IMG/VR virus record: IMGVR_UViG_3300046804_003469
Span: 124,001-188,000 of that record
DNA: 64,000 nt
Reading direction: 5' to 3' (one strand)
Part shown: one piece after another, positions 44,690-57,055 of the stretch
Position numbering within the stretch: position 1 is the first letter of the stretch
Layout of the letters: every line of letters starts with the position of its first letter
Notes under the pieces: model-generated
What the model saw: the letters and a program-made list of their open reading frames with translations, nothing else
The model's database searches: none
Told to the model about the DNA's origin: nothing
Made by a program: the position numbers and the translations under genes

Positions 44690-46388
44690 AAAAATTCGTT
44701 GGAAAAACTTTTTAAGCACTGGAAATCAGTTTACGGAAGTCATTCTCAACAAGACAGATAACACTCTTATTATAGGATCAAATGGTGCTGGAAAGAGTAC
44801 AATTCTTGATGCATTGACTTTTTCACTTTTTGGAAAACCTTTTCGTAAAATTAATAAACCACAACTTATAAATTCTACGAATGAAAAGGATTGTTTAGTT
44901 GAGGTTGAATTATCTATTGGTTCTACTTCTTGGAAAGTTGTGCGTGGAATTAAACCAGCAATATTTGAAATTTATAGAAATGGTAAACTTTTAGATCAAT
45001 CTGCTGCTGCTTTAGACCAACAAAAATGGTTAGAGCAAACTGTATTAAAAATGAATTACAAATCTTTCACTCAGATTGTAATTCTTGGATCAAGTACATT
45101 TGTCCCCTTTATGCAACTTCCTGCTGCTCATAGGAGAGAAGTTATTGAAGATCTTTTGGATATTAAAATATTTTCTTCAATGACTTCAATTATTAAGGAT
45201 AAAATACGTCAAATTAAAGATGATATCAAAGTTTTGAATCTTAAAAAAGATTCTTTAAAAGATAAAGTTGATATGCAACAAAATTTTATTGAAGAATTGG
45301 AAAATCGTGGAAATGCCAAAATAAATGCCAATAAAGAAAAGATTGCAAATTTAGATCAAGAAGTTGGTGTTTATATGGTGGATAACTCTGCTATTGAAGA
45401 AGGAATTTATAAACTTCAAAAAGAACAAGAGGGAGTTATTAGTTCTGTAGAAAAAATAAAAAAACTTAATAATCTTAAAGGTAAAGTATCTCAAAAAGTA
45501 GTATCAGTAACAAGAGAGCATAAGTTTTTTAAAGAAAATACGGTATGCCCTACTTGTACTCAAACAATTGAAGAAGAATTTCGGTTAAATAAAGTTGCAG
45601 ATGCTCAAAATAAAGCAAAAGAACTCCAAAAAGGTTATCAAGAACTTGAGGAGACTATAAAAAATGAACAGGAAAGAGAGCGTCAATTTATTGAACTTTC
45701 CAAAGAAATTACAAAACTAAACCATGAGATTTCGCAGAATAATACTCGCATTTCCTTCAACCAAAGACAAATTCAAGATCTTGAATCTGAAATTCAAACT
45801 ATTACCGAACAGATTAAGAATAAAAATACTGAACATGAAAAATTAGAAGAATTTAAAAAAAATCTAACGGAAACTTTTTCTGAACTAGCAGAGAAAAAAG
45901 ACAAAATTAATTATTATGATTTTTCATATAGTTTACTTAAAGATGGTGGAGTAAAAACTAAAATCATCAAGAAGTATCTACCGCTGATAAATCAGCAAGT
46001 TAATCGTTATCTTCAAATGATGGATTTTTATATCAATTTTACTCTTGATGAAGAGTTTGATGAAACTATTCAATCTCCCATTCATGAAGATTTTTCTTAT
46101 GCTTCTTTTAGTGAGGGTGAAAAAATGAGAATTGATTTGTCTCTTTTGTTTACTTGGAGAGAAGTTGCCAGATATAAAAATTCAGTAAATACGAATCTTT
46201 TAATCCTTGATGAAGTATTTGATTCTTCTTTAGATGGATTTGGTACTGATGAATTTTTAAAAATTATTCGGTATGTTATAAAAGATGCTAATATCTTTGT
46301 TATTTCGCATAAAACGGGAATGGAAGATAAATTTAGAAGTGTAGTAAAATTTGAAAAAATTAAAGGTTTTAGTAGGATGGTTTCTTAA
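44676..46388 (+). CDS. gp46: Recombination ATPase gp46 (Rad50/SbcC-like)
   Basis: GSNGAGKS, CPTC zinc hook, FSEGEK signature, LILDEVFD. Confidence 0.97.
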   Translation: MILFEKIRWKNFLSTGNQFTEVILNKTDNTLIIGSNGAGKSTILDALTFSLFGKPFRKINKPQLINSTNEKDCLVEVELSIGSTSWKVVRGIKPAIFEIYRNGKLLDQSAAALDQQKWLEQTVLKMNYKSFTQIVILGSSTFVPFMQLPAAHRREVIEDLLDIKIFSSMTSIIKDKIRQIKDDIKVLNLKKDSLKDKVDMQQNFIEELENRGNAKINANKEKIANLDQEVGVYMVDNSAIEEGIYKLQKEQEGVISSVEKIKKLNNLKGKVSQKVVSVTREHKFFKENTVCPTCTQTIEEEFRLNKVADAQNKAKELQKGYQELEETIKNEQERERQFIELSKEITKLNHEISQNNTRISFNQRQIQDLESEIQTITEQIKNKNTEHEKLEEFKKNLTETFSELAEKKDKINYYDFSYSLLKDGGVKTKIIKKYLPLINQQVNRYLQMMDFYINFTLDEEFDETIQSPIHEDFSYASFSEGEKMRIDLSLLFTWREVARYKNSVNTNLLILDEVFDSSLDGFGTDEFLKIIRYVIKDANIFVISHKTGMEDKFRSVVKFEKIKGFSRMVS

Positions 46389-46432
46389 GTGGCACATGAA
46401 GAAGATTGGGCAGATCGTTTGGTAAATAGGAT
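46386..46432 (+). promoter_or_regulatory. Phage-type promoter: AAGTGGCACA box plus -10 TAGGAT
   Basis: 31-nt spacing from TGGCAC to the -10, identical to the copies at 46582 and 48812. Confidence 0.55.
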
Positions 46433-46464
46433 ATGGGACTTCATAGATAGGATCTGTTACCCTG

Positions 46465-46650
46465 ATGGCAAACCACAAGATCTGGGAAAGTGGTCGCAAT
46501 CCTCACAGGAGGAACGACAAGGGGAAAAAGAAACCCCAAGCACTCCGACAAGCAAAAGCACGACTGAACCACTTTAAAAAGTGTCACAAGACCTCCCCCA
46601 AAAAGGGAGGTTCTTCTTTATTGTACGTTCATACGATTCAAATCAAATGA
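46465..46650 (+). CDS. 61-aa highly basic protein with an internal terminator (ArfA/BrfA-like gene architecture)
   Basis: MANHKIWESGRNPHRRNDKGKKKPQALRQAKARLNHFKK... Own promoter upstream; ATGA overlap with the next gene. Confidence 0.6.
   Translation: MANHKIWESGRNPHRRNDKGKKKPQALRQAKARLNHFKKCHKTSPKKGGSSLLYVHTIQIK
46569..46624 (+). promoter_or_regulatory. Phage-type promoter: CCACTT-N3-AAAGTGTCACAAGA plus -10 TATTGT
   Basis: Near-identical box at 48799-48821, with the same 31-nt spacing. Confidence 0.7.
46591..46619 (+). terminator. Intrinsic terminator-like hairpin inside ORF 46465..46650
   Basis: ACCTCCC-CCAAAAA-GGGAGGT followed by TCTTCTTT. Confidence 0.6.
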
Positions 46651-48797
46651 CCGTCCGCCACGAAATCAAGTCTCAACTCGCCAAACTTCTTGCTACTGAA
46701 GACCTTGTGGTTGAGCACAAGAAAGTAGAGACCGCTTGCTTCAACGTCCATACTCGTGTGCTGACTCTTCCAATGTGGGAGAAGGCAAGCAACACCGTCT
46801 ATGACCTGCTGGTTGGTCACGAAGTTGGTCACGCTCTTTATACTCCAGATGAAGATTGGTTGAAAGAATATAAGATTCCACCTCAGTTTGTGAATGTGGT
46901 GGAGGATGCTCGTATTGAGAAACTGATGAAGCGTCGTTATGCTGGTCTGGCGAAGACTTTCTTCAACGGATACAAGGAACTTGCCGACGATGATTTCTTT
47001 CAAATCAAAGACGACAACCTGGAAACTTATAATCTTGCCGACCGTGCAAACCTGTGGTTCAAGATTGGTAATTATACTCAGGTGCCGATTGAGCATGGTG
47101 AAGAGACTGATATTATCAATCTGATTGCCGAAACTGAAACTTTTGCCGATGTGCTGATTGCCGCAGAGGCACTCTACAAGTATTGTAAGCACAAGCAAGA
47201 AGAAGAAACAAAGACTTCTCTGGATAATCTTGAGTCCCAACAGAGTGGTTCTAATCAACCTGCTTCTGACTTTAGTGATCAACAAGAAGGTGAAAACGAT
47301 CAACCAGAATCTGGTGCTAGTGATGGTTCTTCTTCTGATGAATCTACTCAACAACCTACTCAACAAACTCCCCAAGAAATGGGTGGTGAAAAGGATGAAG
47401 ATCCAGAAGTAAAGACGATGGATTCTCTGGAAGAGTCTCTAAAAGAACTTGTGAATAATAGCACTCCTGAAAATGTTTATTTGGAACTTCCTCAACTTGA
47501 CTTAAAAAAAGTCATTGTTCCAAATGATATTATTCATTCTAAGTGTGAACAAGAATGGGATAACTATATTCAAGTGCGAGAATGTACATATGATCAAATT
47601 TTTGGTGTAGTTGATAAGTCATTTATCGAGTTCAAGCGTTCTGCTCAGAAAGAAGTCAACTATCTGGTGAAAGAGTTTGAGTGTCGCAAGGCAGCAGATT
47701 CCTATGCCCGTGCATCAACTGCCCGTACTGGTGTTCTGGACTGCTCCAAACTTCATACCTACAAGTACAACGAAGACCTGTTTAAAAAAGTCACTACTTT
47801 TGCCGATGGTAAAAATCATGGTCTAGTGTTTGTTCTGGATTGGTCTGGATCTATGAATGAGGTGATGTTGGATACTGTCAAGCAACTCTTCAATCTTGTA
47901 TGGTTCTGTAAGAAAGTTGCAATTCCGTTTGAGGTTTATGCTTTCACTTCGGATTATCCTTTAGTATCTTACGATGAAAATGGTCGATCTAATTTGAGGC
48001 AACTTTCTTATAAAAAACGTGATGGTTTGATTCAAGTTGGGGAATGGTTTTCTATGATGAATCTGTTGACTAGTAATACTAATAATAAAGTTCTTGATCA
48101 ACAGATGAAAAATCTCTATCGTATTGCATATTCTTTTGGTAGAAATTGTTATACTTCTTATTCAATTCCAAATGGACTTTCTCTTTCTGGAACTCCTTTG
48201 AATGAAGCAATTATTTCTCTTCATCAAATTCTCCCTAAATTTCAGAAAGAAAACAAACTTCAAAAAGTTCAGTGTGTGGTTTTAACTGATGGTGAAGCAT
48301 GTGGTATCAAATATCATCGTGAAGTAAAACGTCATTGGGAGCAAGAACCTTTTCTTGGAACTTTTCATATTGGAAGGGATGCTATTCTTCGTGACCGCAA
48401 AACGGGAAATACTTATTCTTTGGATTGTGAATGGCATCAATTTACTGATATTCTTCTTCGCAATATTCGTGATCGTTTTGTCGATATTAACTTTATCGGT
48501 ATTCGTGTTCTCGAATCCCGTGATGCTGGTAGTTTTATTCGCCGTTATTGTGGATTTTATGGTGAAGAACATGATAAAGTGATGGGTGCTTGGCGTAAAG
48601 AAAAAGCATTTTCTATTAAAAAGTCTGGATACCATACTTACTTTGGTCTTTCTGCAACTGCTCTTTCTCAAGATACTGAATTTGAAGTTGCTGAATGTGC
48701 TACTAAATCTCAAATCAAATCTGCATTTGTAAAAAGTTTAAAATCGAAAAAAATGAACAAAAAAATTCTGGGTGAGTTTGTGGAACTGGTTGCCTGA
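46647..48797 (+). CDS. CobT-like protein: HExxH metallopeptidase-like domain, acidic linker, vWA domain
   Basis: GHEVGHALYT, NVVEDARIEK, MIDAS motif DWSGSM, SGTPL, LTDGE. Confidence 0.85.
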   Translation: MTVRHEIKSQLAKLLATEDLVVEHKKVETACFNVHTRVLTLPMWEKASNTVYDLLVGHEVGHALYTPDEDWLKEYKIPPQFVNVVEDARIEKLMKRRYAGLAKTFFNGYKELADDDFFQIKDDNLETYNLADRANLWFKIGNYTQVPIEHGEETDIINLIAETETFADVLIAAEALYKYCKHKQEEETKTSLDNLESQQSGSNQPASDFSDQQEGENDQPESGASDGSSSDESTQQPTQQTPQEMGGEKDEDPEVKTMDSLEESLKELVNNSTPENVYLELPQLDLKKVIVPNDIIHSKCEQEWDNYIQVRECTYDQIFGVVDKSFIEFKRSAQKEVNYLVKEFECRKAADSYARASTARTGVLDCSKLHTYKYNEDLFKKVTTFADGKNHGLVFVLDWSGSMNEVMLDTVKQLFNLVWFCKKVAIPFEVYAFTSDYPLVSYDENGRSNLRQLSYKKRDGLIQVGEWFSMMNLLTSNTNNKVLDQQMKNLYRIAYSFGRNCYTSYSIPNGLSLSGTPLNEAIISLHQILPKFQKENKLQKVQCVVLTDGEACGIKYHREVKRHWEQEPFLGTFHIGRDAILRDRKTGNTYSLDCEWHQFTDILLRNIRDRFVDINFIGIRVLESRDAGSFIRRYCGFYGEEHDKVMGAWRKEKAFSIKKSGYHTYFGLSATALSQDTEFEVAECATKSQIKSAFVKSLKSKKMNKKILGEFVELVA

Positions 48798-48798
48798 T

Positions 48799-48854
48799 CC
48801 ACTTTTCAAACTGTCACAAGAGTCATCTCTATGCCCCTTGTGTGCCCCTATAAT
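48799..48854 (+). promoter_or_regulatory. Phage-type promoter: CCACTT-N3-AAACTGTCACAAGA plus -10 TATAAT
   Basis: Perfect -10 located 31 nt after TGTCAC; no canonical -35. Confidence 0.75.
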
Positions 48855-48886
48855 TACTTTGTTGAAACAATTCCACTTAACTCATC

Positions 48887-49999
48887 ATGCCCCGTAAAAT
48901 TTCTGTGACTGACGACCAACTGATTACTGATCTTCGTTCTGTGTTTGGTAGTGAAGTAATTGCTGCCGATATTCGTGGATTTTGTGCCTCTCGTGGTCTT
49001 AACTATCAAACTGTGACTCGTCGCCTTGATAACTATAAGACTGGTCGTGGTCGTTGGAATCTTGAGGTAACTCAAGAACGTGTTGAAGAAATTGAACGTT
49101 CTTACCAATCTCCTGCAGTTCTTCCTGTCGTGGAACAAAACCTTATTCCTGATAAAGATGATACCTTCGTCAAGTTTGGTAATTTTAACGATATTAAAAA
49201 AATTATTCAGTCCCGTCTTTTTTATCCTACGTTTATTACGGGTCTTTCGGGTAATGGTAAAACGTTCAGTGTGGAGCAAGCATGTGCTCAATTGGGTCGG
49301 GAACTGATTCGTGTCAACATCACCATTGAGACCGATGAGGATGATCTGATTGGTGGTTTCCGTCTTGTGAATGGTGAAACTGCATGGCATAACGGTCCTG
49401 TGATTGAAGCATTAGAGCGTGGTGCAATTCTTCTTCTGGATGAGATTGATCTTGCTTCTAACAAGATTCTGTGTCTCCAATCTGTTCTTGAAGGTAAGGG
49501 CGTCTTCCTCAAAAAAATTGGTCGATTCGTGAAACCCGCTGCTGGATTCAACGTGATTGCCACTGCAAATACCAAGGGTAAGGGTTCTGATGATGGTCGT
49601 TTCATTGGCACCAACGTGCTCAACGAAGCATTCCTTGAACGCTTCCCCGTGACCTTTGAGCAGTCCTACCCTGCTCCCGCAACGGAGCAGAAGATCCTGG
49701 AAGGCATCGCTCTGGACCTTGGCGTGGAAGACCGCGACTTCTGCAAGCAATTGGTAAATTGGTCTGATATTATTAGGAAAACTTTCTATGATGGTGGTAT
49801 TGAAGAAATCATTAGCACCCGACGACTGGTTCATATCATTCGTGCATATAGTATTTTTGGTGATAAGGCAAAGGCAATCCAAGTTTGCATTAACCGCTTT
49901 GACGATGAAACCAAAACCGCATTCCTTGAACTTTATGATAAAATTGATGTCAATTTTGAACTTCCAAAAGAAGAGAGTGGCGAGACTCCTACTTTCTAA
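48887..49999 (+). CDS. cobS: CobS/MoxR-like AAA+ ATPase
   Basis: GLSGNGKT, LLLDEID, ATANTKGKG, NEAFLERF, STRRLV. Confidence 0.9.
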   Translation: MPRKISVTDDQLITDLRSVFGSEVIAADIRGFCASRGLNYQTVTRRLDNYKTGRGRWNLEVTQERVEEIERSYQSPAVLPVVEQNLIPDKDDTFVKFGNFNDIKKIIQSRLFYPTFITGLSGNGKTFSVEQACAQLGRELIRVNITIETDEDDLIGGFRLVNGETAWHNGPVIEALERGAILLLDEIDLASNKILCLQSVLEGKGVFLKKIGRFVKPAAGFNVIATANTKGKGSDDGRFIGTNVLNEAFLERFPVTFEQSYPAPATEQKILEGIALDLGVEDRDFCKQLVNWSDIIRKTFYDGGIEEIISTRRLVHIIRAYSIFGDKAKAIQVCINRFDDETKTAFLELYDKIDVNFELPKEESGETPTF

Positions 50000-50020
50000 T
50001 TTCTAATAAAACTTTTTTAC

Positions 50021-50060
50021 TGAAAAGTGTTATTCGTATAAATAGTAATAGCACTTTTCA
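50021..50060 (+). promoter_or_regulatory. 14-bp hairpin with late promoter TATAAATA (50037-50044) in its loop
   Basis: TGAAAAGTGTTATT / AATAGCACTTTTCA inverted repeat ending 7 nt before the HNH ATG. Confidence 0.75.
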
Positions 50061-50067
50061 CCAACTT

Positions 50068-50565
50068 ATGTCATATACAAAAGAACAAAGAATTGAGTAT
50101 AATAAAAAATACTATGAAAATAGGAGTGATGAGCAAAAAGAACTAAAACGCCTTGCTGATAGGGAATATTATTACAAAAATAAAGAAAAATGCAATAAAA
50201 GGCATTTAGAATATTATGAAACCAATAAAGAAAAACTAAAAAAACAGAATACTGAAAACAATAACAAAAGACGACAAAAACTAAAAGAGGAAGCAAAACA
50301 AAAACTTGGTGGAAAATGTGTATGGTGTGGAGCAACTGAAAACCTTGAATTTGACCATATAGACCCAGCACAAAAACAATTTACCATAAGTGCCTTTCCT
50401 TGCTCTCTTGAATTATGGTGGAAAGAGGTTGAAAAATGTCGCCTATTATGCAAAACCTGCCACAAAAAACATAGTGATGCTGAAATGGCAGCAAAACATC
50501 TTTATTGGGTAAATCTTTCTTTTGATGAACGACAAAAACTCATTCAGCAGCAACTTGACCAATAA
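50068..50565 (+). CDS. Free-standing HNH (homing) endonuclease
   Basis: CVWCG...LEFDHIDP...KCRLLCKTCHKKH, with a basic helical N-terminus of YYxKNKEK repeats. Confidence 0.88.
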   Translation: MSYTKEQRIEYNKKYYENRSDEQKELKRLADREYYYKNKEKCNKRHLEYYETNKEKLKKQNTENNNKRRQKLKEEAKQKLGGKCVWCGATENLEFDHIDPAQKQFTISAFPCSLELWWKEVEKCRLLCKTCHKKHSDAEMAAKHLYWVNLSFDERQKLIQQQLDQ

Positions 50566-50583
50566 CCTCAATCCTGATATAAT
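50555..50583 (+). promoter_or_regulatory. Sigma70-type promoter with extended -10
   Basis: TTGACC-17 nt-TATAAT, with TG-N preceding the -10. Confidence 0.8.
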
Positions 50584-50585
50584 TG

Positions 50586-50614
50586 GGGGAGGTAAAAAAT
50601 ACACCTTCCCTTTT
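50586..50614 (+). terminator. Possible terminator hairpin overlapping the predicted transcription start
   Basis: GGGGAGGT-N9-ACCTTCCC followed by TTTT. Confidence 0.45.
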
Positions 50615-50618
50615 CATT

Positions 50619-51119
50619 ATGGATAATAAAAACACTGATTACATTTCACTAAACAACCCTCAATATTTTATGGGTGGTGATGGTTGTAGTGACGATTATG
50701 CACATTTGAATTTAAGTAACTTGTATACTTATAATCTCAATAATGAAGATAAAATTGAAATTAAAAAAACTCCAGGTGAATCTTCCGCAACTATGAATGA
50801 GACTAAAAATCATCTTTGGAAATACAACGAAGACAAAATCTTGAAAGATATTCAGGATTATGTGACTAGCACTTATGGAAGTCACTATTGCGGACATCAA
50901 CAAGAATATCAAGGTGTCCAAACGATTGATTTGATGGCAGCAAAGGAACTTGCTTCAGATTTCTGTCAAGCAAATATTATTAAATACGGTTCTCGTTATG
51001 GTGATAAAGACGGACGTAGCAAGCGTGATTTGATGAAAGTCATTCACTATGCTATGCTTCTACTTCACTTCGATGGTCATTATTCACGCAAGGATAATGG
51101 TCTTACAGAATTCCGTTGA
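50619..51119 (+). CDS. DUF3310-like (putative nucleotide kinase family) protein
   Basis: KYNEDKIL...STYGSHY...QTIDL...FCQANIIKYGSRYGDKDG...DLMKVIHYA. ATG 50619 preferred over TTG 50583. Confidence 0.65.
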   Translation: MDNKNTDYISLNNPQYFMGGDGCSDDYAHLNLSNLYTYNLNNEDKIEIKKTPGESSATMNETKNHLWKYNEDKILKDIQDYVTSTYGSHYCGHQQEYQGVQTIDLMAAKELASDFCQANIIKYGSRYGDKDGRSKRDLMKVIHYAMLLLHFDGHYSRKDNGLTEFR

Positions 51120-51121
51120 TT

Positions 51122-51808
51122 ATGAAACTCAGACAAGATACTATGAAATTTTCTGATAAAACTTTAACTCTTCTTAAAAATTTTTCTTCGATTAATCAAT
51201 CAATTCTTTTTAAGAAGGGAAATTCGCTTCGCACCATTTCGGTAATGAAAAACATTCTTGCTGAAGCAACTATTGATGAAGATCTCCCTAAAGATTTTGG
51301 AATTTATGATTTAAACCAATTTCTAAATGGTCTTTCACTTCACAATGATGCTGAACTGGACTTTACAAATGACAAGTACACAATCATTAAAGAAGGTAAA
51401 AGTAGGTCGAAATACTTCTTTGCTGATCCAAATGTAATTGTAACTCCTCCCGATAAATCTATTGTTCTTCCTAGTGAAGATGTTTGCTTTCTTCTTGATA
51501 CTAAAGAATTAGATAAACTGAAAAAAGCATCAGCAGTTTATGAACTTGATGATCTTTCGGTAATCGGTGAAAATGGAGTTGTAAAACTTCTTGTTCGTGA
51601 TAAGAAGAATGAAACATCTAATGACTTCTCCGTAATTGTTGGTGAAACGGATGATACTTTTGTTTTTAACTTTAAAGTTGAAAATCTTAAGATTCTTCCT
51701 GGTTCTTATGAAGTAGTAATTTCTAAGCAACTTCTTTCTAGGTTCAAGAGTACTACCTATAGTGTAACGTATTACATCGCAATGGAACCAGACTCATCTT
51801 TCAACTGA
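51122..51808 (+). CDS. gp45: Sliding clamp gp45
   Basis: LLKNFSSINQSI, FGIYDLNQFL, YYIAMEPDS. Confidence 0.96.
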   Translation: MKLRQDTMKFSDKTLTLLKNFSSINQSILFKKGNSLRTISVMKNILAEATIDEDLPKDFGIYDLNQFLNGLSLHNDAELDFTNDKYTIIKEGKSRSKYFFADPNVIVTPPDKSIVLPSEDVCFLLDTKELDKLKKASAVYELDDLSVIGENGVVKLLVRDKKNETSNDFSVIVGETDDTFVFNFKVENLKILPGSYEVVISKQLLSRFKSTTYSVTYYIAMEPDSSFN

Positions 51809-51836
51809 TATACTAAGGATATCAACAACTTACATT

Positions 51837-52346
51837 ATGAACATCTTTGCCACTCATCCCTTTCCTGCTGAGTCTGCTATTTGTCTTCCCGATAAACATA
51901 TTGTTAAAATGCCACTTGAGTGCTGCCAAATGCTTTCCATTGTAGCATCCAAGTGGTATCATAATTATGGAGCAATTCATAAAGCAGATGGAAATCCTTA
52001 TGCAACTGAGAAAGGTGCATTCCGCAACCATCCATGTACTCAATGGGCATCACAAACAATTGATAATGCATATTGGTTGATTAAGTGGGGAATGAATTTA
52101 TGTGATGAATATGCTATTCGTTATGATAAGATTCATGCTTGTTATAACACTCTAGTTGAAGCATATTATTTGTTTCCTAAAGGTAAACTGGATAACGTAA
52201 CTCCTTTTGCTCGTGCGATGCCAGATGAGTATAAACTTGATGGCAGTATTGACACTTTTACTGCTTACAAGATGTATATCGCATCCAAACCTTGGGTTGC
52301 ATCTAATTATCTTCGTATGCCGCAACGAAAACCTGATTGGGTCTAA
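51837..52346 (+). CDS. Pyrimidine-dimer DNA glycosylase/DenV-like protein
   Basis: MNIF...DKHIVKMPLECCQMLS, NHPCTQW, AMPDEYK, AYKMY. Confidence 0.8.
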   Translation: MNIFATHPFPAESAICLPDKHIVKMPLECCQMLSIVASKWYHNYGAIHKADGNPYATEKGAFRNHPCTQWASQTIDNAYWLIKWGMNLCDEYAIRYDKIHACYNTLVEAYYLFPKGKLDNVTPFARAMPDEYKLDGSIDTFTAYKMYIASKPWVASNYLRMPQRKPDWV

Positions 52347-52349
52347 ATT

Positions 52350-52526
52350 ATGAAACTCTCTGATGATGAAGTTCTGTGGATTTCTGCTATACTTCATAAA
52401 TCTAAATCAAAAGTTCTTTCGGAATATCCTGAAGCACAATTGATTATGGATAAGATTTGTAACGAATCTGGAAAAATAGTTGCAAATAAAGCACGGAAAC
52501 TCTTAAAACTTGGTAAGTGGTCTTAA
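52350..52526 (+). CDS. 58-aa hypothetical protein (not in the ORF track)
   Basis: Hand translation: MKLSDDEVLWISAILHKSKSKVLSEYPEAQLIMDKICNESGKIVANKARKLLKLGKWS. Exactly fills the gap. Confidence 0.65.
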   Translation: MKLSDDEVLWISAILHKSKSKVLSEYPEAQLIMDKICNESGKIVANKARKLLKLGKWS

Positions 52527-52529
52527 ATT

Positions 52530-53474
52530 ATGACAAGTGAATTCTTATTCTGTGAGAAGTATCGTCCTCAAGTGATTGAAGATTGTATTCTCCCCGATGA
52601 TACTAAAAAAACATTCAAGGAGTTTGTAGAAAAAGGAGAGATTCCAAATCTTCTTCTTGCTGGTCCTCCTGGTATTGGTAAAACAACAATCGCAAAAGCA
52701 CTTTGCAATGAACTAGGAGCAGATTATTATGTTATCAATGGATCCGACGAAGGACGTTTCTTGGATACTGTACGAAACCAAGCAAAGAACTTTGCTTCGA
52801 CCGTCTCACTTACGGGATCTTCTAAACATAAAGTCATCATCATCGATGAGGCGGATAACACAGGAAACGACGTACAACTCCTTCTACGGGCGAATATTGA
52901 GACATTTTATAGCAACTGCAGATTCATCTTCACCTGCAACTATAAAAACAAAATTATTGAACCTCTTCACTCTCGATGTGCAGTCATCGACTTCACAATC
53001 AAGGGGAAACAAAAGGCACAACTTGCGGGATCATTTTTCAAGCGTCTCCAAATTATCTTGGATCAGGAAAAAATTGAATATGATCAAAAAGTCGTTGCAG
53101 AACTTGTATCCAAACATTTTCCTGATTTTCGACGTGTCCTCAACGAATGTCAACGATATTCTACAGGAGGAAAAATCGACTCAGGCATTCTTGCATCTTT
53201 CTCAGACGTTTCAGTAAATGATCTCATTAAACATCTCAAAACTAAAAACTTCACAGAAGTACGAAAGTGGGTGGTCTCCAACTTGGACAACGATCCTTCT
53301 ATCCTTTTTCGCAGGATTTATGACGCCTGTTATACTTGCCTTTCACCTCAAACTATTCCCGCTGCCATTCTTGTTATTGCTAAGTATCAATACCAATGTG
53401 CGTTCGTGGCTGATCAAGAAATTAACTTTTTAGCAGCATTGACTGAAATTATGTGTGAGTGTGAGTTTCTATGA
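52530..53474 (+). CDS. gp44: Clamp loader large subunit gp44
   Basis: EKYRP, GPPGIGKTT, IIDEAD, PLHSRC, FPDFRR. Confidence 0.97.
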   Translation: MTSEFLFCEKYRPQVIEDCILPDDTKKTFKEFVEKGEIPNLLLAGPPGIGKTTIAKALCNELGADYYVINGSDEGRFLDTVRNQAKNFASTVSLTGSSKHKVIIIDEADNTGNDVQLLLRANIETFYSNCRFIFTCNYKNKIIEPLHSRCAVIDFTIKGKQKAQLAGSFFKRLQIILDQEKIEYDQKVVAELVSKHFPDFRRVLNECQRYSTGGKIDSGILASFSDVSVNDLIKHLKTKNFTEVRKWVVSNLDNDPSILFRRIYDACYTCLSPQTIPAAILVIAKYQYQCAFVADQEINFLAALTEIMCECEFL

Positions 53475-53686
53475 ATCCTTATAAAATAGATCGCTCAAAA
53501 CTATATGAGCATCCAGTTAAGACTACTCCCGAAAATGTGAAAGAGGCAAATGAAGGTCTTTTTCGTGCTAAAATGACTCTTCCTGCTGCTGCAAAACATT
53601 GTGGTATGACGCAGAAAGAAATGAAACTCACCTTTTTTGAATACCTAAAGTATAACAAACCTGATTATGAAAACAAAGGTCACTAA
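53471..53686 (+). CDS. 71-aa putative helix-turn-helix protein
   Basis: MTLPAAAKHCGMTQKEMK HTH-like pattern; ATGA overlap with gp44. Confidence 0.65.
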   Translation: MNPYKIDRSKLYEHPVKTTPENVKEANEGLFRAKMTLPAAAKHCGMTQKEMKLTFFEYLKYNKPDYENKGH

Positions 53687-54221
53687 ACCTCACAAAAAAA
53701 ATTGGAAGGCATATTGTGAAACTGCCTTTAATAATTGTAAAGGTAGTTTGTATAACTGGGGGAAACCAGATTATTTTAGACCAATTACTCGCACCTTCTA
53801 CATTAATGTATTTGATTGTGCTGGAGCAAATCATACTGGTCTTATTAGTAAAGATGCGATTGATAGTCCTAAAGATAGAACACTTGATCACTGTCTTTCG
53901 CCGCAGTTTATTGGTAGGATGATTATGGATAATCCAGAAAAGTTTTTGAATGATTATGAAACATTTGAAAATCTTTTTTGGTTGGCATGTTCTACAATCA
54001 CAGTAACTAAAAAAGAAAATACAGCATTGAGTTTATTGACTATCAATGATGGTTATGAATATAAAGTTTCTGTTCCAACAAACTTGAAATATAATCATCT
54101 TGGAATTCAACTGTATATGAAAGTTGGAAATCGCTGGAGGGATTCTGCTCCTGTAGAATCGAATATTATTGATGCTCCAGAAGAATTGTTGGAATATGAA
54201 AAAAACTTTTTAATTTTGTAA
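53667..54221 (+). CDS. 184-aa hypothetical protein, possible degenerate His-Me/HNH-like fold
   Basis: TLDHCLSPQ ... TITVTKKEN. Confidence 0.55.
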   Translation: MKTKVTKPHKKNWKAYCETAFNNCKGSLYNWGKPDYFRPITRTFYINVFDCAGANHTGLISKDAIDSPKDRTLDHCLSPQFIGRMIMDNPEKFLNDYETFENLFWLACSTITVTKKENTALSLLTINDGYEYKVSVPTNLKYNHLGIQLYMKVGNRWRDSAPVESNIIDAPEELLEYEKNFLIL

Positions 54222-55282
54222 TGTTATTAACCGAAGAGAATGCCATTTGGGCAGCAAATCAATTCATACAATATTATTCTGATTTTAATCGTATTGACGA
54301 TTATATGAGGTTTGTTAAAAAGAGTAGAATTGAAAATTCTGTTGGAAAATTATTTGGACCTCATGATGAAATCTTTTCAGATTTTTCTTTAGATCCAAAT
54401 AATATGTCATTTGCAATTCATGAAGTTGACACAAGTTCAAAACCAAAATCAAAGTATAACCAAGAATTATACTCTGAAATTTTGAACATGACTGCATCAA
54501 ATGCTATTGAAGAAGCAATTCCAGGTAGAACTATTAAATGGATTGTTACTGAAGAAACAACTAAAAAAATTGTCGGAGTTGTTCGTTTTGGGTCTCCTAC
54601 AATTAACTCAAAACCAAGAAATGATTATTTTGGTGAAGTTCTTCCTCTTTCCACAATTAATCAGCAGTTTGTAATGGGATTTAACATTGTTCCCGTCCAA
54701 CCATTTGGATATAATTATCTTGGCGGAAAACTTCTTGCTCTTTTAGCATCATCAAATTATCTTAAAAGACAATTTGATTTGAAGTATGGAACTGATCTTC
54801 AGTATTTTGAAACTACTTCATTGTATGGAACAACAAAAGGTGTATCCATGTATGATGGTCTTAAACCTTACATCAAACATATTGGAGATACTGAAAGCAA
54901 ATTTCTTCCTTTGTTTCATGATGATTATTTTAGAGATTTATTCTGGTGGTTTAATAATAATGCTAATGGCGGAGAAAGATTAATCTCTGCAGATAAGTCT
55001 TCTAAAAAATTAAAAATACAAGTGAAAATGATTTCAATTATTCGCCATTCTCTTAAGGACGAAAATAAATTAAATGAGTTTAATGCGTGTATTGAAAAAG
55101 CAAAATCATTAACTGAAAAGAAAAGATACTATCTTTCAAAATTTGGTTATGAACCAGAAGATGTTATTGCTTGGTGGAAAGTTAAGGCATCTAAAAGATA
55201 TAATAAATTAATTCTGGAGAATAAGTTAAGAACAAAAATTGAATTATGGGAACCTGGAGTTGATTTGGAGATTATTCGATGA
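54221..55282 (+). CDS. DUF4338 (Druantia DruA-related) family protein
   Basis: IPGRTIKWIV...VGVVRFGSPTINSKPRN, IVPVQPFGYNYLGGKLLALL, ETTSLYG...SMYDG. Confidence 0.7.
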   Translation: MLLTEENAIWAANQFIQYYSDFNRIDDYMRFVKKSRIENSVGKLFGPHDEIFSDFSLDPNNMSFAIHEVDTSSKPKSKYNQELYSEILNMTASNAIEEAIPGRTIKWIVTEETTKKIVGVVRFGSPTINSKPRNDYFGEVLPLSTINQQFVMGFNIVPVQPFGYNYLGGKLLALLASSNYLKRQFDLKYGTDLQYFETTSLYGTTKGVSMYDGLKPYIKHIGDTESKFLPLFHDDYFRDLFWWFNNNANGGERLISADKSSKKLKIQVKMISIIRHSLKDENKLNEFNACIEKAKSLTEKKRYYLSKFGYEPEDVIAWWKVKASKRYNKLILENKLRTKIELWEPGVDLEIIR

Positions 55283-55422
55283 AATGTGAAGTCCAACTCT
55301 ATGTTGCTGGTACGGTTTTTTATGAAACCGTAATTGCCAGAGATTATAAAGAAGCAAAGGAAGTTGCCCTTGCTCGTAATCCTAATGCTAAAGTAATTGC
55401 TGTCACTGCGAAGTTTAAATAA
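55279..55422 (+). CDS. 47-aa hypothetical protein (not in the ORF track)
   Basis: MKCEVQLYVAGTVFYETVIARDYKEAKEVALARNPNAKVIAVTAKFK. ATGA and TAATG overlaps on the two sides. Confidence 0.75.
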   Translation: MKCEVQLYVAGTVFYETVIARDYKEAKEVALARNPNAKVIAVTAKFK

Positions 55423-55802
55423 TGGAACTGAAAGATTGGTTGAATTCGATAAATCAAACAAAAGTAAATTTAATTGATGATGATTTATCTTTAGAAAAAG
55501 AATATGCTCCATTCATCATCAATAGGTGTCTTTCTGGTCATATTGATTGTATTATGTATGCAAATGAGATGAACAGGTATAATTTTTTGCCAAAAAAGAT
55601 GCAGTATGATTTTTTTATAAATAGTCTGAGGAAAAAAAAGAGATTCTCTCCTTGGCTCCGAAAAGATCAAATCAAAGACTTAGAATGTGTTAAACAATAC
55701 TATGGATATAGTAATGAAAAAGCACTACAATCTTTGAAGATTTTAAACAAAGAACAAATCAACTTTATTAAACAACGACTTGAAATTGGCGGAAAGAAAT
55801 GA
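55422..55802 (+). CDS. gp62: Clamp loader small subunit gp62
   Basis: YAPFIINRCLS, ANEMN, QYDFFINSLRKKKRFSPW, YYGYSNEKA. Confidence 0.93.
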   Translation: MELKDWLNSINQTKVNLIDDDLSLEKEYAPFIINRCLSGHIDCIMYANEMNRYNFLPKKMQYDFFINSLRKKKRFSPWLRKDQIKDLECVKQYYGYSNEKALQSLKILNKEQINFIKQRLEIGGKK

Positions 55803-56239
55803 CTAATCAAACTATTGAACCACAAGTAAATTGGTCTCCTGAGATGATGGTGGAAGTTATTCTGAATGAACCAGATGACTTTCTTAAAGTTCGTGAAACT
55901 TTGACTCGAATCGGAGTTGCATCGAGAAAGGAGAAAAAACTCTATCAGAGTTGCCACATTCTTCATAAGCAAGGTAGATATTATCTTGTTCACTTTAAGG
56001 AACTGTTTGCTCTGGATGGTAAACATGCAAACCTGACTGTGAATGATGTTCAGCGTCGCAATCGTATTACTCGCCTTCTTTCTGATTGGGGGTTAATTAC
56101 TGTTGTAAAAGAAGAATCTATTGCAGATATTGCTCCCCTCAATCAAATTAAAGTTCTTTCTTATAAAGATAAAGGTGATTGGATTTTAGAGCAAAAATAC
56201 AATATTGGTAAAAAAGGAAAAGGTCAGGAAACCGAATGA
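55799..56239 (+). CDS. regA: Translational repressor RegA
   Basis: DDFLKVRETLTRIGVAS, LYQSCHILHKQGRYYLVHFKELFALDG. Confidence 0.98.
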   Translation: MTNQTIEPQVNWSPEMMVEVILNEPDDFLKVRETLTRIGVASRKEKKLYQSCHILHKQGRYYLVHFKELFALDGKHANLTVNDVQRRNRITRLLSDWGLITVVKEESIADIAPLNQIKVLSYKDKGDWILEQKYNIGKKGKGQETE

Positions 56240-56245
56240 TTTTGT

Positions 56246-56270
56246 AGGGAGGTCAACACCTCCCTTTTTT
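56246..56270 (+). terminator. Intrinsic terminator after regA
   Basis: AGGGAGGT-CAAC-ACCTCCCT followed by a T run. Confidence 0.85.
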
Positions 56271-56290
56271 AATGAATTTTGATATATATT

Positions 56291-56379
56291 AGTGATGGGA
56301 TTGGAAATTCCACCCATACGCTAAAGCGGAGTCTTCGGATCCGTAAGTCAAAACACTCGCTTATTCAAGGAGAACTCAA
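56291..56379 (+). promoter_or_regulatory. Structured hsp20 5' leader, ROSE-like RNA thermometer candidate
   Basis: Three hairpins. The last pairs CTC-G-CTT with the SD AAGGAG and leaves a bulged G (UCGCU motif). Confidence 0.6.
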
Positions 56380-56826
56380 ATGTTTAACACTTCAGTTACC
56401 AAATACTATACATCTAATAATGGAATTGAAAAGTTGTTTCAAGATTTAGAAAAAAATTCAATTGGTATGGATGAATGGTTCCATAGAATTGGAACTCTCC
56501 ACGAATCATCTGCCAATTACCCTCCATATAATTTAATTAAAGAAAGTTCTACAGAGTTTACTTTAGAAATTGCTCTGGCAGGATATAAAAAAGAAGATAT
56601 TGAAGTGACAACAGAATGGAACAAACTTTTTGTAGAAGTTAAAAAAGCAAAGACTGAATATGAATATATGCATAATGGAATTGCTCGTAGAGCATTTACT
56701 AGAACATGGACTTTATCTGATGATGTAGTTGTTGGTGATGTTTCTTTTGTAGATGGATTACTCACTATTAAACTAAATAGAGTTATTCCAGATCATCAAA
56801 AGAAAAAAGTATATGATATCTTTTAA
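56380..56826 (+). CDS. hsp20: Small heat-shock protein Hsp20
   Basis: NYPPYNL, LEIALAGY, HNGIARRAFTRTWTL, DGLLTIKL alpha-crystallin motifs. Confidence 0.96.
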   Translation: MFNTSVTKYYTSNNGIEKLFQDLEKNSIGMDEWFHRIGTLHESSANYPPYNLIKESSTEFTLEIALAGYKKEDIEVTTEWNKLFVEVKKAKTEYEYMHNGIARRAFTRTWTLSDDVVVGDVSFVDGLLTIKLNRVIPDHQKKKVYDIF

Positions 56827-56971
56827 AGAGTTTATGGAAATCATTCAAGAAAAGGTTGGAGATTTTGGAAATCCACCTTTACCAACTCCAGTAAACTGTT
56901 ATGGAAAAACTGTGAAATATGCCATGGCTCCTGGAAAGAAAGTTTGTGCTTTTAAAAGAAAAAGAGAATAA
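56813..56971 (+). CDS. 52-aa late protein with CTS-like N-terminus (not in the ORF track)
   Basis: MISFKEFMEIIQEKVGDFGNPPLPTPVNCYGKTVKYAMAPGKKVCAFKRKRE. CTAAATA late-promoter variant at 56773-56779 inside hsp20. Confidence 0.55.
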   Translation: MISFKEFMEIIQEKVGDFGNPPLPTPVNCYGKTVKYAMAPGKKVCAFKRKRE

Positions 56972-56974
56972 ATA

Positions 56975-57044
56975 ATACGGGTTATCCAAATATCGTCGGC
57001 GCGGAGGGGAAACTGGCACAATCCAGTTGACTCCCCTCTTTTTT
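56975..57044 (+). ncRNA. Candidate ~65-nt small RNA between a late promoter (56967-56974) and a terminator-like hairpin
   Basis: No ORF. GAGGGGA-AACTGG-loop-CCAGTT-gac-TCCCCTC followed by T6. Confidence 0.35.
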
Positions 57045-57055
57045 CATGGTAAAAT
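57011..57055 (+). promoter_or_regulatory. Sigma70-type promoter embedded in the hairpin, with an upstream AACTGGCACA box
   Basis: TTGACT-17 nt-TAAAAT; box to -10 spacing is 30 nt. Confidence 0.7.

What the first reader, a model, noticed from the sequence alone, without database searches (positions are those of the whole stretch)
46386..57055. Phage-specific promoter class: AA(C/G)TG(T/G)CACA box fixed 30-31 nt before the -10
Seen: four copies. These are TGGCAC 46390 to TAGGAT (31 nt), TGTCAC 46582 to TATTGT (31), TGTCAC 48812 to TATAAT (31) and TGGCAC 57014 to TAAAAT (30). Two share the longer box CCACTT-N3-AAA(G/C)TGTCACAAGA, an imperfect inverted repeat. Three lack a canonical -35. Inference: an activator site at about -45 defining an early regulon of the basic ORF, cobT-like, cobS-like and the Sm-like/gp43 operon. 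A similar early motif has, to my recollection, been noted in cyanomyoviruses, but I know of no identified binding factor.
Basis: partly seen in the sequence, partly recalled or inferred. Interest (0 to 1): 0.6.

Follow-up and report, generated by a model that had tools for sequence, protein, structure and literature searches.

The report
Cyanophage early-promoter dyad box
Two of the four flagged sites belong to a conserved cyanophage promoter cassette, a 28-bp palindromic protein-binding box a fixed 27-29 nt upstream of a -10 element; it appears to be the already reported early-gene element of T4-like cyanophages, whose binding factor is still unknown.

Summary
The four sequences and spacings are in the window as described. 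The box is far commoner than chance: 5 copies in the window against 0.57 expected, and 22 in the 215-kb phage genome against 0 for the reversed control.

Its 3' end lies 27-29 nt before a TANNNT -10, so it spans about -68 to -41. An intrinsic terminator often fills the spacer.

- **Sites 2 (46563-46590) and 3 (48793-48820):** full members. Both cassettes are conserved upstream of the peptidase/CobT-like and CobS-like genes in about 50 and 69 related viral contigs.
- **Site 1:** a half-site inside a window-specific insertion. Membership is uncertain.
- **Site 4:** not a member. Its TGGCACA sits in a conserved terminator hairpin, which carries its own TTGACT-17-TAAAAT promoter.

The two arms show no compensatory covariation and the box does not fold as RNA, so it is best read as a DNA site for a dimeric protein. 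It is not enriched in 201 host-family genomes. It does occur in Syn9, P-SSM2, S-SKS1 and S-SRM01.

By my recollection this matches the "novel early regulatory element" of Doron et al. 2016, a paper I could not read here. Whether the box activates or represses, and what binds it, remains untested.

The parts
46563..46590 (+). Site 2: full 28-bp dyad box.
   Evidence: PWM 24.1/25.0 bits on the two strands. Conserved at -82 to -84 from the ATG of the peptidase homolog in about 50 related contigs.
46590..46612 (+). GC hairpin followed by a T-rich tract. Terminator-like, and it fills the box-to-(-10) spacer of site 2.
   Evidence: Terminator scan. RNA fold -13.1 kcal/mol. Same hairpin in relatives L017, L030, L039 and L062.
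46619..46624 (+). -10-like hexamer TATTGT, 28 nt after the box. No -35 (best 2 of 6).
   Evidence: Orthologs carry TATGAT, TATTAT or TATAAT at the same place.
46647..48797 (+). 716-aa peptidase/CobT-like gene served by the site-2 promoter.
   Evidence: phrog_459 'peptidase' 1.5e-269, with a weak cobalamin-biosynthesis-protein hit.
48793..48820 (+). Site 3: full 28-bp dyad box.
   Evidence: PWM 27.0/26.5 bits. Box present upstream of the CobS homolog in 69 distinct related sequences and in P-SSM2, S-SRM01 and S-SCSM2R.
48849..48854 (+). -10 hexamer TATAAT, 28 nt after the box. No -35, and the spacer hairpin seen in relatives has decayed here.
   Evidence: Spacer folds at 0 kcal/mol. 53 of 69 orthologs have a hairpin plus T-run in this spacer.
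48887..49999 (+). CobS/MoxR-type AAA ATPase gene served by the site-3 promoter.
   Evidence: Pfam AAA_5 7.9e-18 and CbbQ_C. Annotated CobS/MoxR in related phages.
46371..46398 (+). Site 1: right arm only (AAGTGGCACA). It overlaps the gp46 stop codon, and its left arm is degenerate.
   Evidence: PWM 19.1 bits, inflated because the site helped train the PWM. It lies in a stretch absent from gp46-adjacent relatives L030, L062 and L075.
46427..46432 (+). TAGGAT, a possible -10 for the basic ORF. It is 28 nt after the site-1 box, and the box end is 66 nt from ATG 46465.
   Evidence: The geometry equals that of site 3. TAGGAT is also the -10 candidate of the genome copy at G000 116302.
46465..46650 (+). 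Conserved 61-aa basic ORF. It reads through the site-2 box, hairpin and -10, and ends in an ATGA overlap with the peptidase start.
   Evidence: Alignment with 6 relatives shows mostly synonymous changes in this frame. No Pfam, PHROG or Atlas lead.
57004..57044 (+). Site 4: strong intrinsic terminator (stem-loop plus T6).
   Evidence: Fold -20.5 kcal/mol, z -3.84. Five relatives keep the hairpin but read CCTGGCAAAAT or similar instead of TGGCACA.
57027..57055 (+). Host-like sigma-70 promoter TTGACT-17-TAAAAT with TG upstream. Its -35 is embedded in the 3' arm of the terminator. It serves the DUF6561 genes and gp43 DNA polymerase.
   Evidence: 10 of 12 matches in the promoter scan. TTGAC(T/A) and the -10 are conserved in relatives. 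Gene identities.
12987..12996 (+). Fifth window match to the 10-mer, inside a long coding frame. Taken as chance.
   Evidence: PWM 15.6 bits, coding context, no -10 geometry.

Best explanation
Shown: sites 2 and 3 are copies of a promoter cassette present about 20 times in this cyanomyovirus genome. The cassette has four parts:
- a length-constrained 27-29 nt spacer of free sequence, often holding the intrinsic terminator of the upstream gene;
- a TANNNT -10 hexamer;
- a 20-30 nt leader to the start codon.

Inferred: the dyad, spanning about -68 to -41, is a double-stranded DNA site for a dimeric or tetrameric sequence-specific protein. That protein helps host RNA polymerase holoenzyme use -10 elements that often lack a -35. 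This defines the early class of cyanomyovirus transcription. Because the dyad is not a host regulatory motif, the factor is either brought or encoded by the phage, or is a host protein with very few chromosomal sites.

From memory: this is the same element that Doron et al. 2016 reported as a novel early-gene regulatory element of Syn9 and P-TIM40.

Site 4 is a different, host-like promoter nested in a terminator. Site 1 is at most a degenerate member.
For: - **Abundance:** 22 sites of at least 18 bits in the genome against 0.17 in dinucleotide shuffles. AACTGGCA and ACTGGCAC are among the top de novo k-mers upstream of genes, after the late-promoter ATAAATA and T-runs.
- **Geometry:** TANNNT starts 27-29 nt after the box in 15 of 20 own copies, against a background of 2.5% per position, and in 69 of 69 distinct CobS-upstream orthologs. 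The spacer sequence varies freely. The start codon lies 54-66 nt after the box in most copies.
- **Conservation:** the box, spacer and -10 are kept upstream of the CobS and peptidase homologs in 69 and about 50 related contigs. The box occurs in Syn9 (10 against 3 control, with 5 PWM hits in its small-ORF region), S-SKS1 (5 against 0), S-SRM01 (12 against 1) and P-SSM2 (9 against 0, including just upstream of cobS). S-SCSM2R carries variants.
- **DNA rather than RNA:** arm complementarity is no better than for independent columns (152 against 147.6 pairs, P=0.20). The non-complementary CACTT...AACTG combination is the conserved form in CobS orthologs. The boxes fold at -3.3 and -0.7 kcal/mol, no different from shuffles. 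No Rfam family matches.
- **Phage-specific:** 8 sites per 215 kb at up to 1 mismatch in the phage. Host-family genomes of about 2 Mb show 0-5 each, no more than the reversed control, across 201 genomes. The one recurrent host hit is coding.
- **Early-type targets:** 17 of 20 copies lie in the 90-117 kb block of small ORFs.
Against: - No transcription start site or binding data exist for this phage; no RNA run was listed.
- The equation with the published Syn9 early element rests on my memory of an abstract and on finding the box in Syn9's small-ORF region. I could not compare it with the published logo.
- Eight of 20 copies have a reasonable -35, so they may not need an activator.
- A site centred near -55 with half-site cores about 14 bp apart is unusual for classical activators.
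- CobS and the peptidase sit in a replication-gene block that would be 'middle' in T4.
- No DNA-binding protein candidate was found among about 40 phage ORFs scanned.
Confidence: 0.6

Rival explanations
1. The dyad is an operator for a phage-encoded repressor made early in infection. The repressor shuts the early class off at the early-to-middle switch, and the promoters themselves fire with unaided host RNA polymerase.
For: - The site is palindromic and phage-specific, and absent from host genomes.
- 40% of copies have a usable -35 such as TTGACA-17-TAGATT or TTGCCA-17-TAAAAT, so some could work unaided.
- Early genes must be shut off.
- A sub-threshold MazE/AbrB-like domain occurs in one early-region ORF.
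Against: - The box does not overlap the -35, spacer or -10, where repressors usually act.
- Many members, including sites 2 and 3 and most CobS orthologs, have no -35 and no extended -10. They would be very weak unaided.
- The +/-1 bp spacing constraint across unrelated spacer sequences argues for a stereospecific contact with polymerase.
Confidence: 0.2
2. The box acts at the RNA level. It would be a 3'-end stem-loop of the upstream transcript, for stability or processing, forming a tandem structure with the terminator hairpin. Its distance to the -10 would be a by-product of cassette ancestry.
For: The box sits at the 3' ends of upstream genes, directly before a terminator hairpin in most orthologs. 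It is an inverted repeat.
Against: - No compensatory covariation.
- C-C or G-G mismatched arm combinations are conserved.
- Folding energy is negligible.
- Spacing to the -10 is kept where there is no hairpin (sites at G000 92667, 102557 and 172793).
- One copy precedes a tRNA gene, with the -10 just upstream of its 5' end.
Confidence: 0.05
3. The cassettes are mainly recombination substrates, like the promoter-early stem-loop (PeSL) cassettes of T4-type phages. Their sequence similarity would then reflect spread by modular shuffling rather than binding of a dedicated factor.
For: - They cluster in a hyperplastic small-ORF region.
- Extended similarity runs through the leader between copies, and even between this phage and Syn9.
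- Gene content differs between relatives exactly at cassette borders.
- PeSLs are described for other T4-like phages (PMC2839356, PMC4122927).
Against: This does not explain dyad symmetry, positional invariants (CA at 8-9, TG at 20-21, C at 23) amid variable flanks, or strict spacing with unrelated spacers. It is compatible with, rather than exclusive of, the promoter model.
Confidence: 0.1
4. The four window copies are a chance collection of a short GC-containing word near AT-rich -10-like hexamers.
For: This is true for site 4 (terminator loop, not conserved) and for 12987 (coding). TGKCACA alone is not enriched: 13 against 16.6 expected.
Against: Genome-wide enrichment, ortholog conservation and fixed geometry for sites 2 and 3.
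Confidence: 0.03

Closest known systems
Early-gene regulatory element of T4-like cyanophages (Doron et al. 2016, ISME J 10:1437, PMC5029184). Cited from memory of the abstract; the paper is not held here.
   Same: A non-sigma-70-like element in front of early genes, conserved and abundant among T4-like cyanophages, with no known factor. The dyad box found here occurs in Syn9 itself, in front of small ORFs gp68, gp73, gp78, gp79 and gp89/90, and in P-SSM2, S-SKS1 and S-SRM01.
   Different: I could not compare it with the published logo or TSS list, so identity is inferred. I cannot say whether the dyad symmetry, the terminator nested in the spacer and the absence from host genomes shown here were described there.
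PeSL (promoter-early stem-loop) cassettes of T4-type phages (Arbiol et al. 2010, PMC2839356; Comeau et al. 2014, PMC4122927)
   Same: Compact terminator-plus-early-promoter cassettes. They are repeated many times, concentrated in hyperplastic regions before small ORFs, and sit at borders of gene-content differences. Site 4 fits this description well.
   Different: PeSLs carry sigma-70-type -35/N17/-10 promoters with the stem-loop upstream. In sites 2 and 3 the stem-loop replaces the -35 region, and a 28-bp dyad with no PeSL counterpart lies upstream.
T4 middle promoters (MotA box plus -10, sigma appropriation by AsiA/MotA)
   Same: A phage-specific upstream box stands in for the -35 in front of a normal -10.
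   Different: The MotA box (TGCTT) is non-palindromic and centred at -30. T4-like cyanophages lack motA and asiA (stated in PMC5780444). Here the box is a dyad spanning -68 to -41.
NtcA/CRP-family activator-dependent promoters of cyanobacteria
   Same: A palindromic site upstream of a -10 with a weak or absent -35.
   Different: The consensus (GTA-N8-TAC; TGTGA-N6-TCACA) and position (-41.5) differ. These figures are from established knowledge. The dyad is not enriched in 201 host-family genomes.
Sigma-54 -24 element TGGCAC
   Same: The hexamer TGGCAC is shared.
   Different: No TTGC(A/T) lies 5 nt downstream at any site. TGTCAC is equally used. By general knowledge, cyanobacteria lack sigma-54.

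Membership tests
Cyanomyovirus early-gene regulatory element (Doron et al. 2016) | Present and repeated in Syn9 and other T4-like cyanophages | tested here: met
   Syn9 10 against 3 control, with PWM hits before gp68, gp73, gp78, gp79 and gp89/90. S-SKS1 5 against 0, S-SRM01 12 against 1, P-SSM2 9 against 0.
Cyanomyovirus early-gene regulatory element (Doron et al. 2016) | Lies at a fixed distance upstream of mapped early transcription start sites | not testable with these tools
   No RNA run was listed, and the paper with the TSS data is not held.
Cyanomyovirus early-gene regulatory element (Doron et al. 2016) | Sequence matches the published motif logo | not testable with these tools
   Paper not held. 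Other papers citing it give no sequence.
Cyanomyovirus early-gene regulatory element (Doron et al. 2016) | Does not resemble a host sigma-70 -35/-10 promoter | tested here: met
   Sites 2 and 3 match TTGACA at only 2 of 6 positions at 16-18 nt spacing. This is not met for site 4, which has TTGACT-17-TAAAAT.
PeSL composite terminator-promoter cassette | Terminator stem-loop immediately coupled to an early promoter | tested here: met
   Hairpin plus T-run at site 2 and site 4, and in 53 of 69 CobS orthologs. Decayed at site 3.
PeSL composite terminator-promoter cassette | Sigma-70-type -35, 17-nt spacer and -10 downstream of the stem-loop | tested here: not met
   Sites 2 and 3 have no -35, and the stem-loop lies between the box and the -10. 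Site 4 alone meets it, with its -35 inside the stem.
PeSL composite terminator-promoter cassette | Concentrated in hyperplastic small-ORF regions and at indel borders between relatives | tested here: inconclusive
   17 of 20 copies lie in the 90-117 kb small-ORF block. Gene content differs at cassette borders in a few relatives. No systematic breakpoint analysis was done.
T4 MotA-dependent middle promoter | MotA box (a/t)(a/t)TGCTT(t/c)A centred at -30, 12-13 nt from the -10 | tested here: not met
   Spacers of sites 1-4 read directly. No TGCTT at that position.
Sigma-54 promoter | TGGCAC-N5-TTGC(A/T), the -24/-12 elements | tested here: not met
   Five nt after TGGCAC come GAAG (site 1) and AGTT (site 4). 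Sites 2 and 3 have TGTCAC.
Host transcription-factor regulon (NtcA/CRP/LexA-type site borrowed by the phage) | The same dyad recurs in host genomes above background | tested here: not met
   0 hits in 5 picocyanobacterial genomes. In 201 family genomes counts equal the reversed-pattern control. The recurrent hit is coding.
Structured RNA element (stem-loop) | Compensatory changes keep the arms paired, and folding is stable | tested here: not met
   152 against 147.6 expected pairs, P=0.20. Folding at -3.3 and -0.7 kcal/mol, within the shuffle range. No Rfam hit.
Intrinsic terminator (site 4 only) | GC-rich stem-loop followed by a T-run, conserved in relatives | tested here: met
   -20.5 kcal/mol, z -3.84, followed by T6. 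Conserved in 5 relatives.

The most novel reading that the evidence does not exclude
The 28-bp dyad is the operator of a still unidentified phage-supplied factor, for example one packaged in the virion and injected with the DNA. Bound at about -55, it would let host RNA polymerase fire -35-less promoters within minutes of infection. The cassette tolerates, and usually carries, the upstream gene's terminator inside its own spacer, so each cassette is a self-insulating, portable early expression unit. It even drives a phage tRNA-Leu(TAA) gene.
Probability: 0.3. Interest if true: 0.65.

Novelty: new member of a known kind. Interest (0 to 1): 0.35.

Why it matters
T4-like cyanophages lack the MotA/AsiA system. 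How they start and time transcription in Synechococcus and Prochlorococcus is only partly understood, and the factor that reads the early element is unknown.

This analysis sharpens the target:
- It defines a 28-bp dyad with fixed geometry, invariant CA/TG/C positions and a stronger proximal arm.
- It indicates the element is recognised as DNA, not RNA.
- It shows the element is not a host regulon motif.
- It gives about 20 natural variants in one genome and more than 100 orthologous variants to guide pull-down, EMSA and reporter design.

It also corrects the regulon in this window. The peptidase/CobT-like and CobS-like genes are in it. The gp43 operon is out, served instead by a host-like promoter nested in a terminator.

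Tried and rejected
- **RNA evidence:** The look-up of sequencing runs listed no RNA run, so read laying was not used and no TSS could be checked.
- **Literature:** Doron et al. 2016 could not be opened by DOI or PMC id. Nine full-text searches and eleven papers gave no printed sequence of the Syn9 early motif.
- **BLAST:** one whole cassette against the phage collection found nothing at E 0.01, because the query is too short for the database size.
- **Host site lead:** a dyad-like sequence recurring in several host genomes proved to be coding sequence of one conserved gene.
- **Candidate binding protein:** Pfam and PHROG scans of about 40 ORFs (replication block, genes behind boxes, early region) gave no HTH or RHH protein. 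The only trace is a sub-threshold MazE/AbrB-like match. An Atlas look-up of the basic 61-aa ORF gave only unnamed viral clusters below 0.9.
- **Rejected readings:** sigma-54 (no -12 element), NtcA/CRP (wrong consensus, position and host distribution), MotA box (absent), RNA hairpin (no covariation, no stability).
Full report
**Context.** The window is bases 124001-188000 of a 215,027-bp, 34% GC viral record rated 100% complete.
- Its genes are those of a T4-like cyanomyovirus. The stretch in question runs gp46, a small basic ORF, a 716-aa peptidase/CobT-like protein, CobS/MoxR ATPase, an HNH endonuclease, DUF3310, the gp45 clamp, DenV, gp44, a DruA-like protein, gp62, RegA, Hsp20, two DUF6561 proteins and gp43 polymerase.
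- The nearest named phages are S-SKS1, S-SCSM2R, S-SRM01 and P-SSM2, at 74-86% identity over parts of the query.
- Its psbA is closest to Cyanobium and Synechococcus genomes. The host is therefore probably a picocyanobacterium; this is an inference.

**Check of the observation.**
- AASTGKCACA occurs 5 times in the window against 0.57 expected.
- It occurs 22 times in the genome, 19 on the gene-coding strand, against 0 for the reversed pattern.
- The 7-mer core alone is not enriched.

**What the motif really is.** Aligning the genome-wide copies shows that the 10-mer is the right arm of a 28-bp near-palindrome, roughly cTTGTGnCAsTTT-NN-AAAsTGnCACAAG.
- A position matrix finds 22 sites of at least 18 bits, against 0.17 in 30 dinucleotide shuffles.
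- Three of the 22 are in long structural genes and look like coding coincidences, and one overlaps a tRNA gene.
- Among the copies counted as members, 17 lie in the 90-117 kb block of small ORFs upstream of the window and two lie in the window.
- In an unbiased k-mer test of regions upstream of genes, AACTGGCA and ACTGGCAC rank just after the late-promoter word ATAAATA and T-runs.
- The right, gene-proximal arm is better conserved than the left. Invariant or near-invariant positions are CA at 8-9, TG at 20-21 and C at 23.

**Geometry.**
- Without choosing a best hexamer, TANNNT starts 27, 28 or 29 nt after the box in 15 of 20 own copies. The background rate is 2.5% per position.
- The start codon follows 54-66 nt after the box in most copies.
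- The spacer has no conserved sequence. In many copies it is a GC hairpin plus T-run, that is, the terminator of the upstream gene.
- With the -10 at -12 to -7, the dyad spans about -68 to -41 and is centred near -55.
- A -35-like hexamer (at least 4 of 6) at 16-18 nt is present in 8 of 20 copies against 14% at random. Sites 2 and 3 have only 2 of 6.

**Conservation.**
- Eighty related viral contigs were fetched through the CobS homolog.
- In 69 distinct upstream sequences the box is present and TANNNT starts 27-29 nt after it in all 69. Fifty-three have a hairpin plus T-run in the spacer.
- About 50 of the same contigs reach the peptidase gene. They show the box at -82 to -84 from its ATG, with a hairpin and a TATGAT-, TATTAT- or TATAAT-type -10.
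- The 20-nt core pattern (up to 1 mismatch) occurs 5, 12 and 9 times in S-SKS1, S-SRM01 and P-SSM2, against 0, 1 and 0 for the control. One P-SSM2 copy lies directly before cobS.
- S-SCSM2R has variants with two or more mismatches before both genes.
- Syn9 has 10 matches against 3 control at up to 2 mismatches. The matrix picks five sites in its small-ORF region with the same spacing to TATTCT or ATACTA, and a leader that is also seen at one copy in this genome.

**The four sites, one by one.**
- **Site 2 (46563-46590)** is a full dyad. It is followed by a hairpin (-13.1 kcal/mol), a T-rich tract, TATTGT and the ATG at 46647.
- **Site 3 (48793-48820)** is a full dyad with TATAAT 28 nt downstream and the ATG at 48887. 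The hairpin that most orthologs carry has decayed here.
- **Site 1 (46371-46398)** has a good right arm but no left TGnCA.
  - It lies in a stretch that gp46-adjacent relatives lack. In those relatives the basic ORF follows gp46 directly.
  - Other relatives have a full box with TAAAAT before the same ORF.
  - Its distances, 28 nt to TAGGAT and 66 nt from the box end to ATG 46465, fit the class. I treat it as a possible weak member.
- **Site 4** is different.
  - AACTGG...CCAGTT there forms the upper stem of a -20.5 kcal/mol terminator (z -3.84).
  - The 3' arm of that stem contains TTGACT, followed 17 nt later by TAAAAT with an upstream TG.
  - Five relatives keep the hairpin, TTGAC(T/A) and the -10 but read CCTGGCAAAAT or similar where the window has TGGCACA.
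  - This is a host-like promoter nested in a terminator, serving the DUF6561 genes and the DNA polymerase.

**DNA site or RNA hairpin?** The evidence favours recognition of double-stranded DNA by a symmetric protein.
- Across 20 copies the arms form 152 Watson-Crick pairs, against 147.6 expected if the arms vary independently (permutation P=0.20). The two variable positions pair no more often than chance.
- The dominant, conserved form before cobS is CACTT...AACTG, which would place C opposite C.
- As RNA the two window dyads fold at -3.3 and -0.7 kcal/mol, within the range of shuffles.
- No Rfam family matches the window or the early region except a tRNA.

**Host or phage specificity.**
- The core pattern (up to 1 mismatch) has 8 sites in the 215-kb phage, against 1 for the control.
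- It has none in five picocyanobacterial genomes.
- In 201 genomes of the host family the counts are 0-5 per genome, no higher than the reversed control.
- The one sequence that recurs across hosts lies inside a conserved protein-coding gene.
- The dyad is therefore not a common host regulatory site. A host factor with very few or looser sites is not excluded.

**Comparison with what is known.**
- From memory, Doron et al. (2016) reported three things: early genes of Syn9 and P-TIM40 are controlled by a novel regulatory element, middle genes use host-like promoters, and these elements are abundant and conserved in T4-like cyanophages.
  - I could not open that paper, and no accessible paper prints the motif.
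  - What I could show fits that picture. The box is in Syn9 before small ORFs, it is conserved across the group, site 4 is a host-like promoter before replication genes, and the late word ATAAATA is separately enriched.
- PeSL cassettes of other T4-type phages (PMC2839356, PMC4122927) are the nearest described architecture. However, they use -35/-10 promoters and have no dyad.
- MotA-type, sigma-54 and NtcA/CRP readings fail on their defining features (see the membership table).

**Mechanism.**
- Shown: the cassette anatomy, its constraint on length but not sequence of the spacer, its conservation, and its phage specificity.
- Inferred: a dimeric or tetrameric protein binds the dyad and, from a fixed face and distance, helps RNA polymerase at -10 elements that often lack a -35.
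- A shut-off operator is the main rival.
  - It is favoured by the copies that have a good -35.
  - It is disfavoured by the position upstream of the core promoter, by the many -35-less members and by the strict spacing.
- A role of the cassettes in modular gene shuffling is compatible with either model.

**Limits.**
- There are no expression or binding data.
- The matrix was trained on this genome.
- My gene calls are simple longest-ORF calls.
- Identity with the published element is not verified.

Noticed in passing
L199:10716-10880, 13529-13620 and 14723-14800 (G000 111716-111880, 114529-114620, 115723-115800; upstream of the window): Downstream of three box promoters whose -10 is TAGATT, the leaders carry clusters of 4-6 direct repeats of (A)ACTAGATT(C), partly as about 21-nt tandem units. 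Fifteen of the 23 forward genome copies of CTAGATT lie in these three clusters. Function unknown.
   Followed up: partly
L199:11923-12082 (G000 112923-113082): A full dyad box with TATAAT 29 nt downstream sits just before tRNA-Leu(TAA). The -10 ends about 13 nt before the tRNA 5' end. The early-type cassette therefore appears to drive this tRNA, the species shown to be limiting for Syn9 in a resistant host (PMC11726456).
   Followed up: partly
window 46465-46650: A conserved, very basic 61-aa ORF reads through the site-2 dyad, hairpin and -10 and overlaps the peptidase start (ATGA). Relatives show mostly synonymous changes in this frame. No family or Atlas lead.
   Followed up: partly
window 56988-57000: A 13-nt sequence, ATATCGTCGGCGC, just upstream of the site-4 terminator is unique in the genome and conserved in five relatives. 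It is preceded by an ATAAATA late-promoter-like word that overlaps the upstream stop codon.
   Followed up: partly
window 54221-55282: A 353-aa protein inside the replication module matches the Pfam family of Druantia protein DruA (4.5e-10), a defence-system component, in a phage genome.
   Followed up: no
window 50068-50565: An HNH endonuclease ORF (PHROG matches to 3e-18) is inserted between the CobS-like gene and DUF3310/gp45. Relatives have different genes at this place.
   Followed up: no
whole genome G000 (window included): ATAAATA and CTAAATA, T4-type late-promoter words, are the most enriched 7-mers within 120 nt upstream of genes: 37 of 257 upstream regions against 7.3 expected.
   Followed up: partly
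L198:7947-8477 (G000 96947-97480): A 177-aa early-region ORF has a sub-threshold C-terminal match to the MazE/AbrB-type DNA-binding fold (E 0.0012, below the Pfam cut-off). It is the only hint of a DNA-binding protein among the ORFs scanned.
   Followed up: no
G000 91213, 108360, 112120, 115113, 116302 (mostly L199): In the opposite direction from the dyad, TANNNT also starts 27-28 nt away in 6 of 20 copies. Some minus-strand ORFs lie in 113-116 kb, so some boxes might serve divergent promoters.
   Followed up: no
window 46397-46465: A stretch of roughly 70 nt after the gp46 stop is absent from gp46-adjacent relatives. It contains site 1's spacer, two TAGGAT words and the start of the basic ORF, so it looks like a recent insertion or cassette remnant.
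   Followed up: partly
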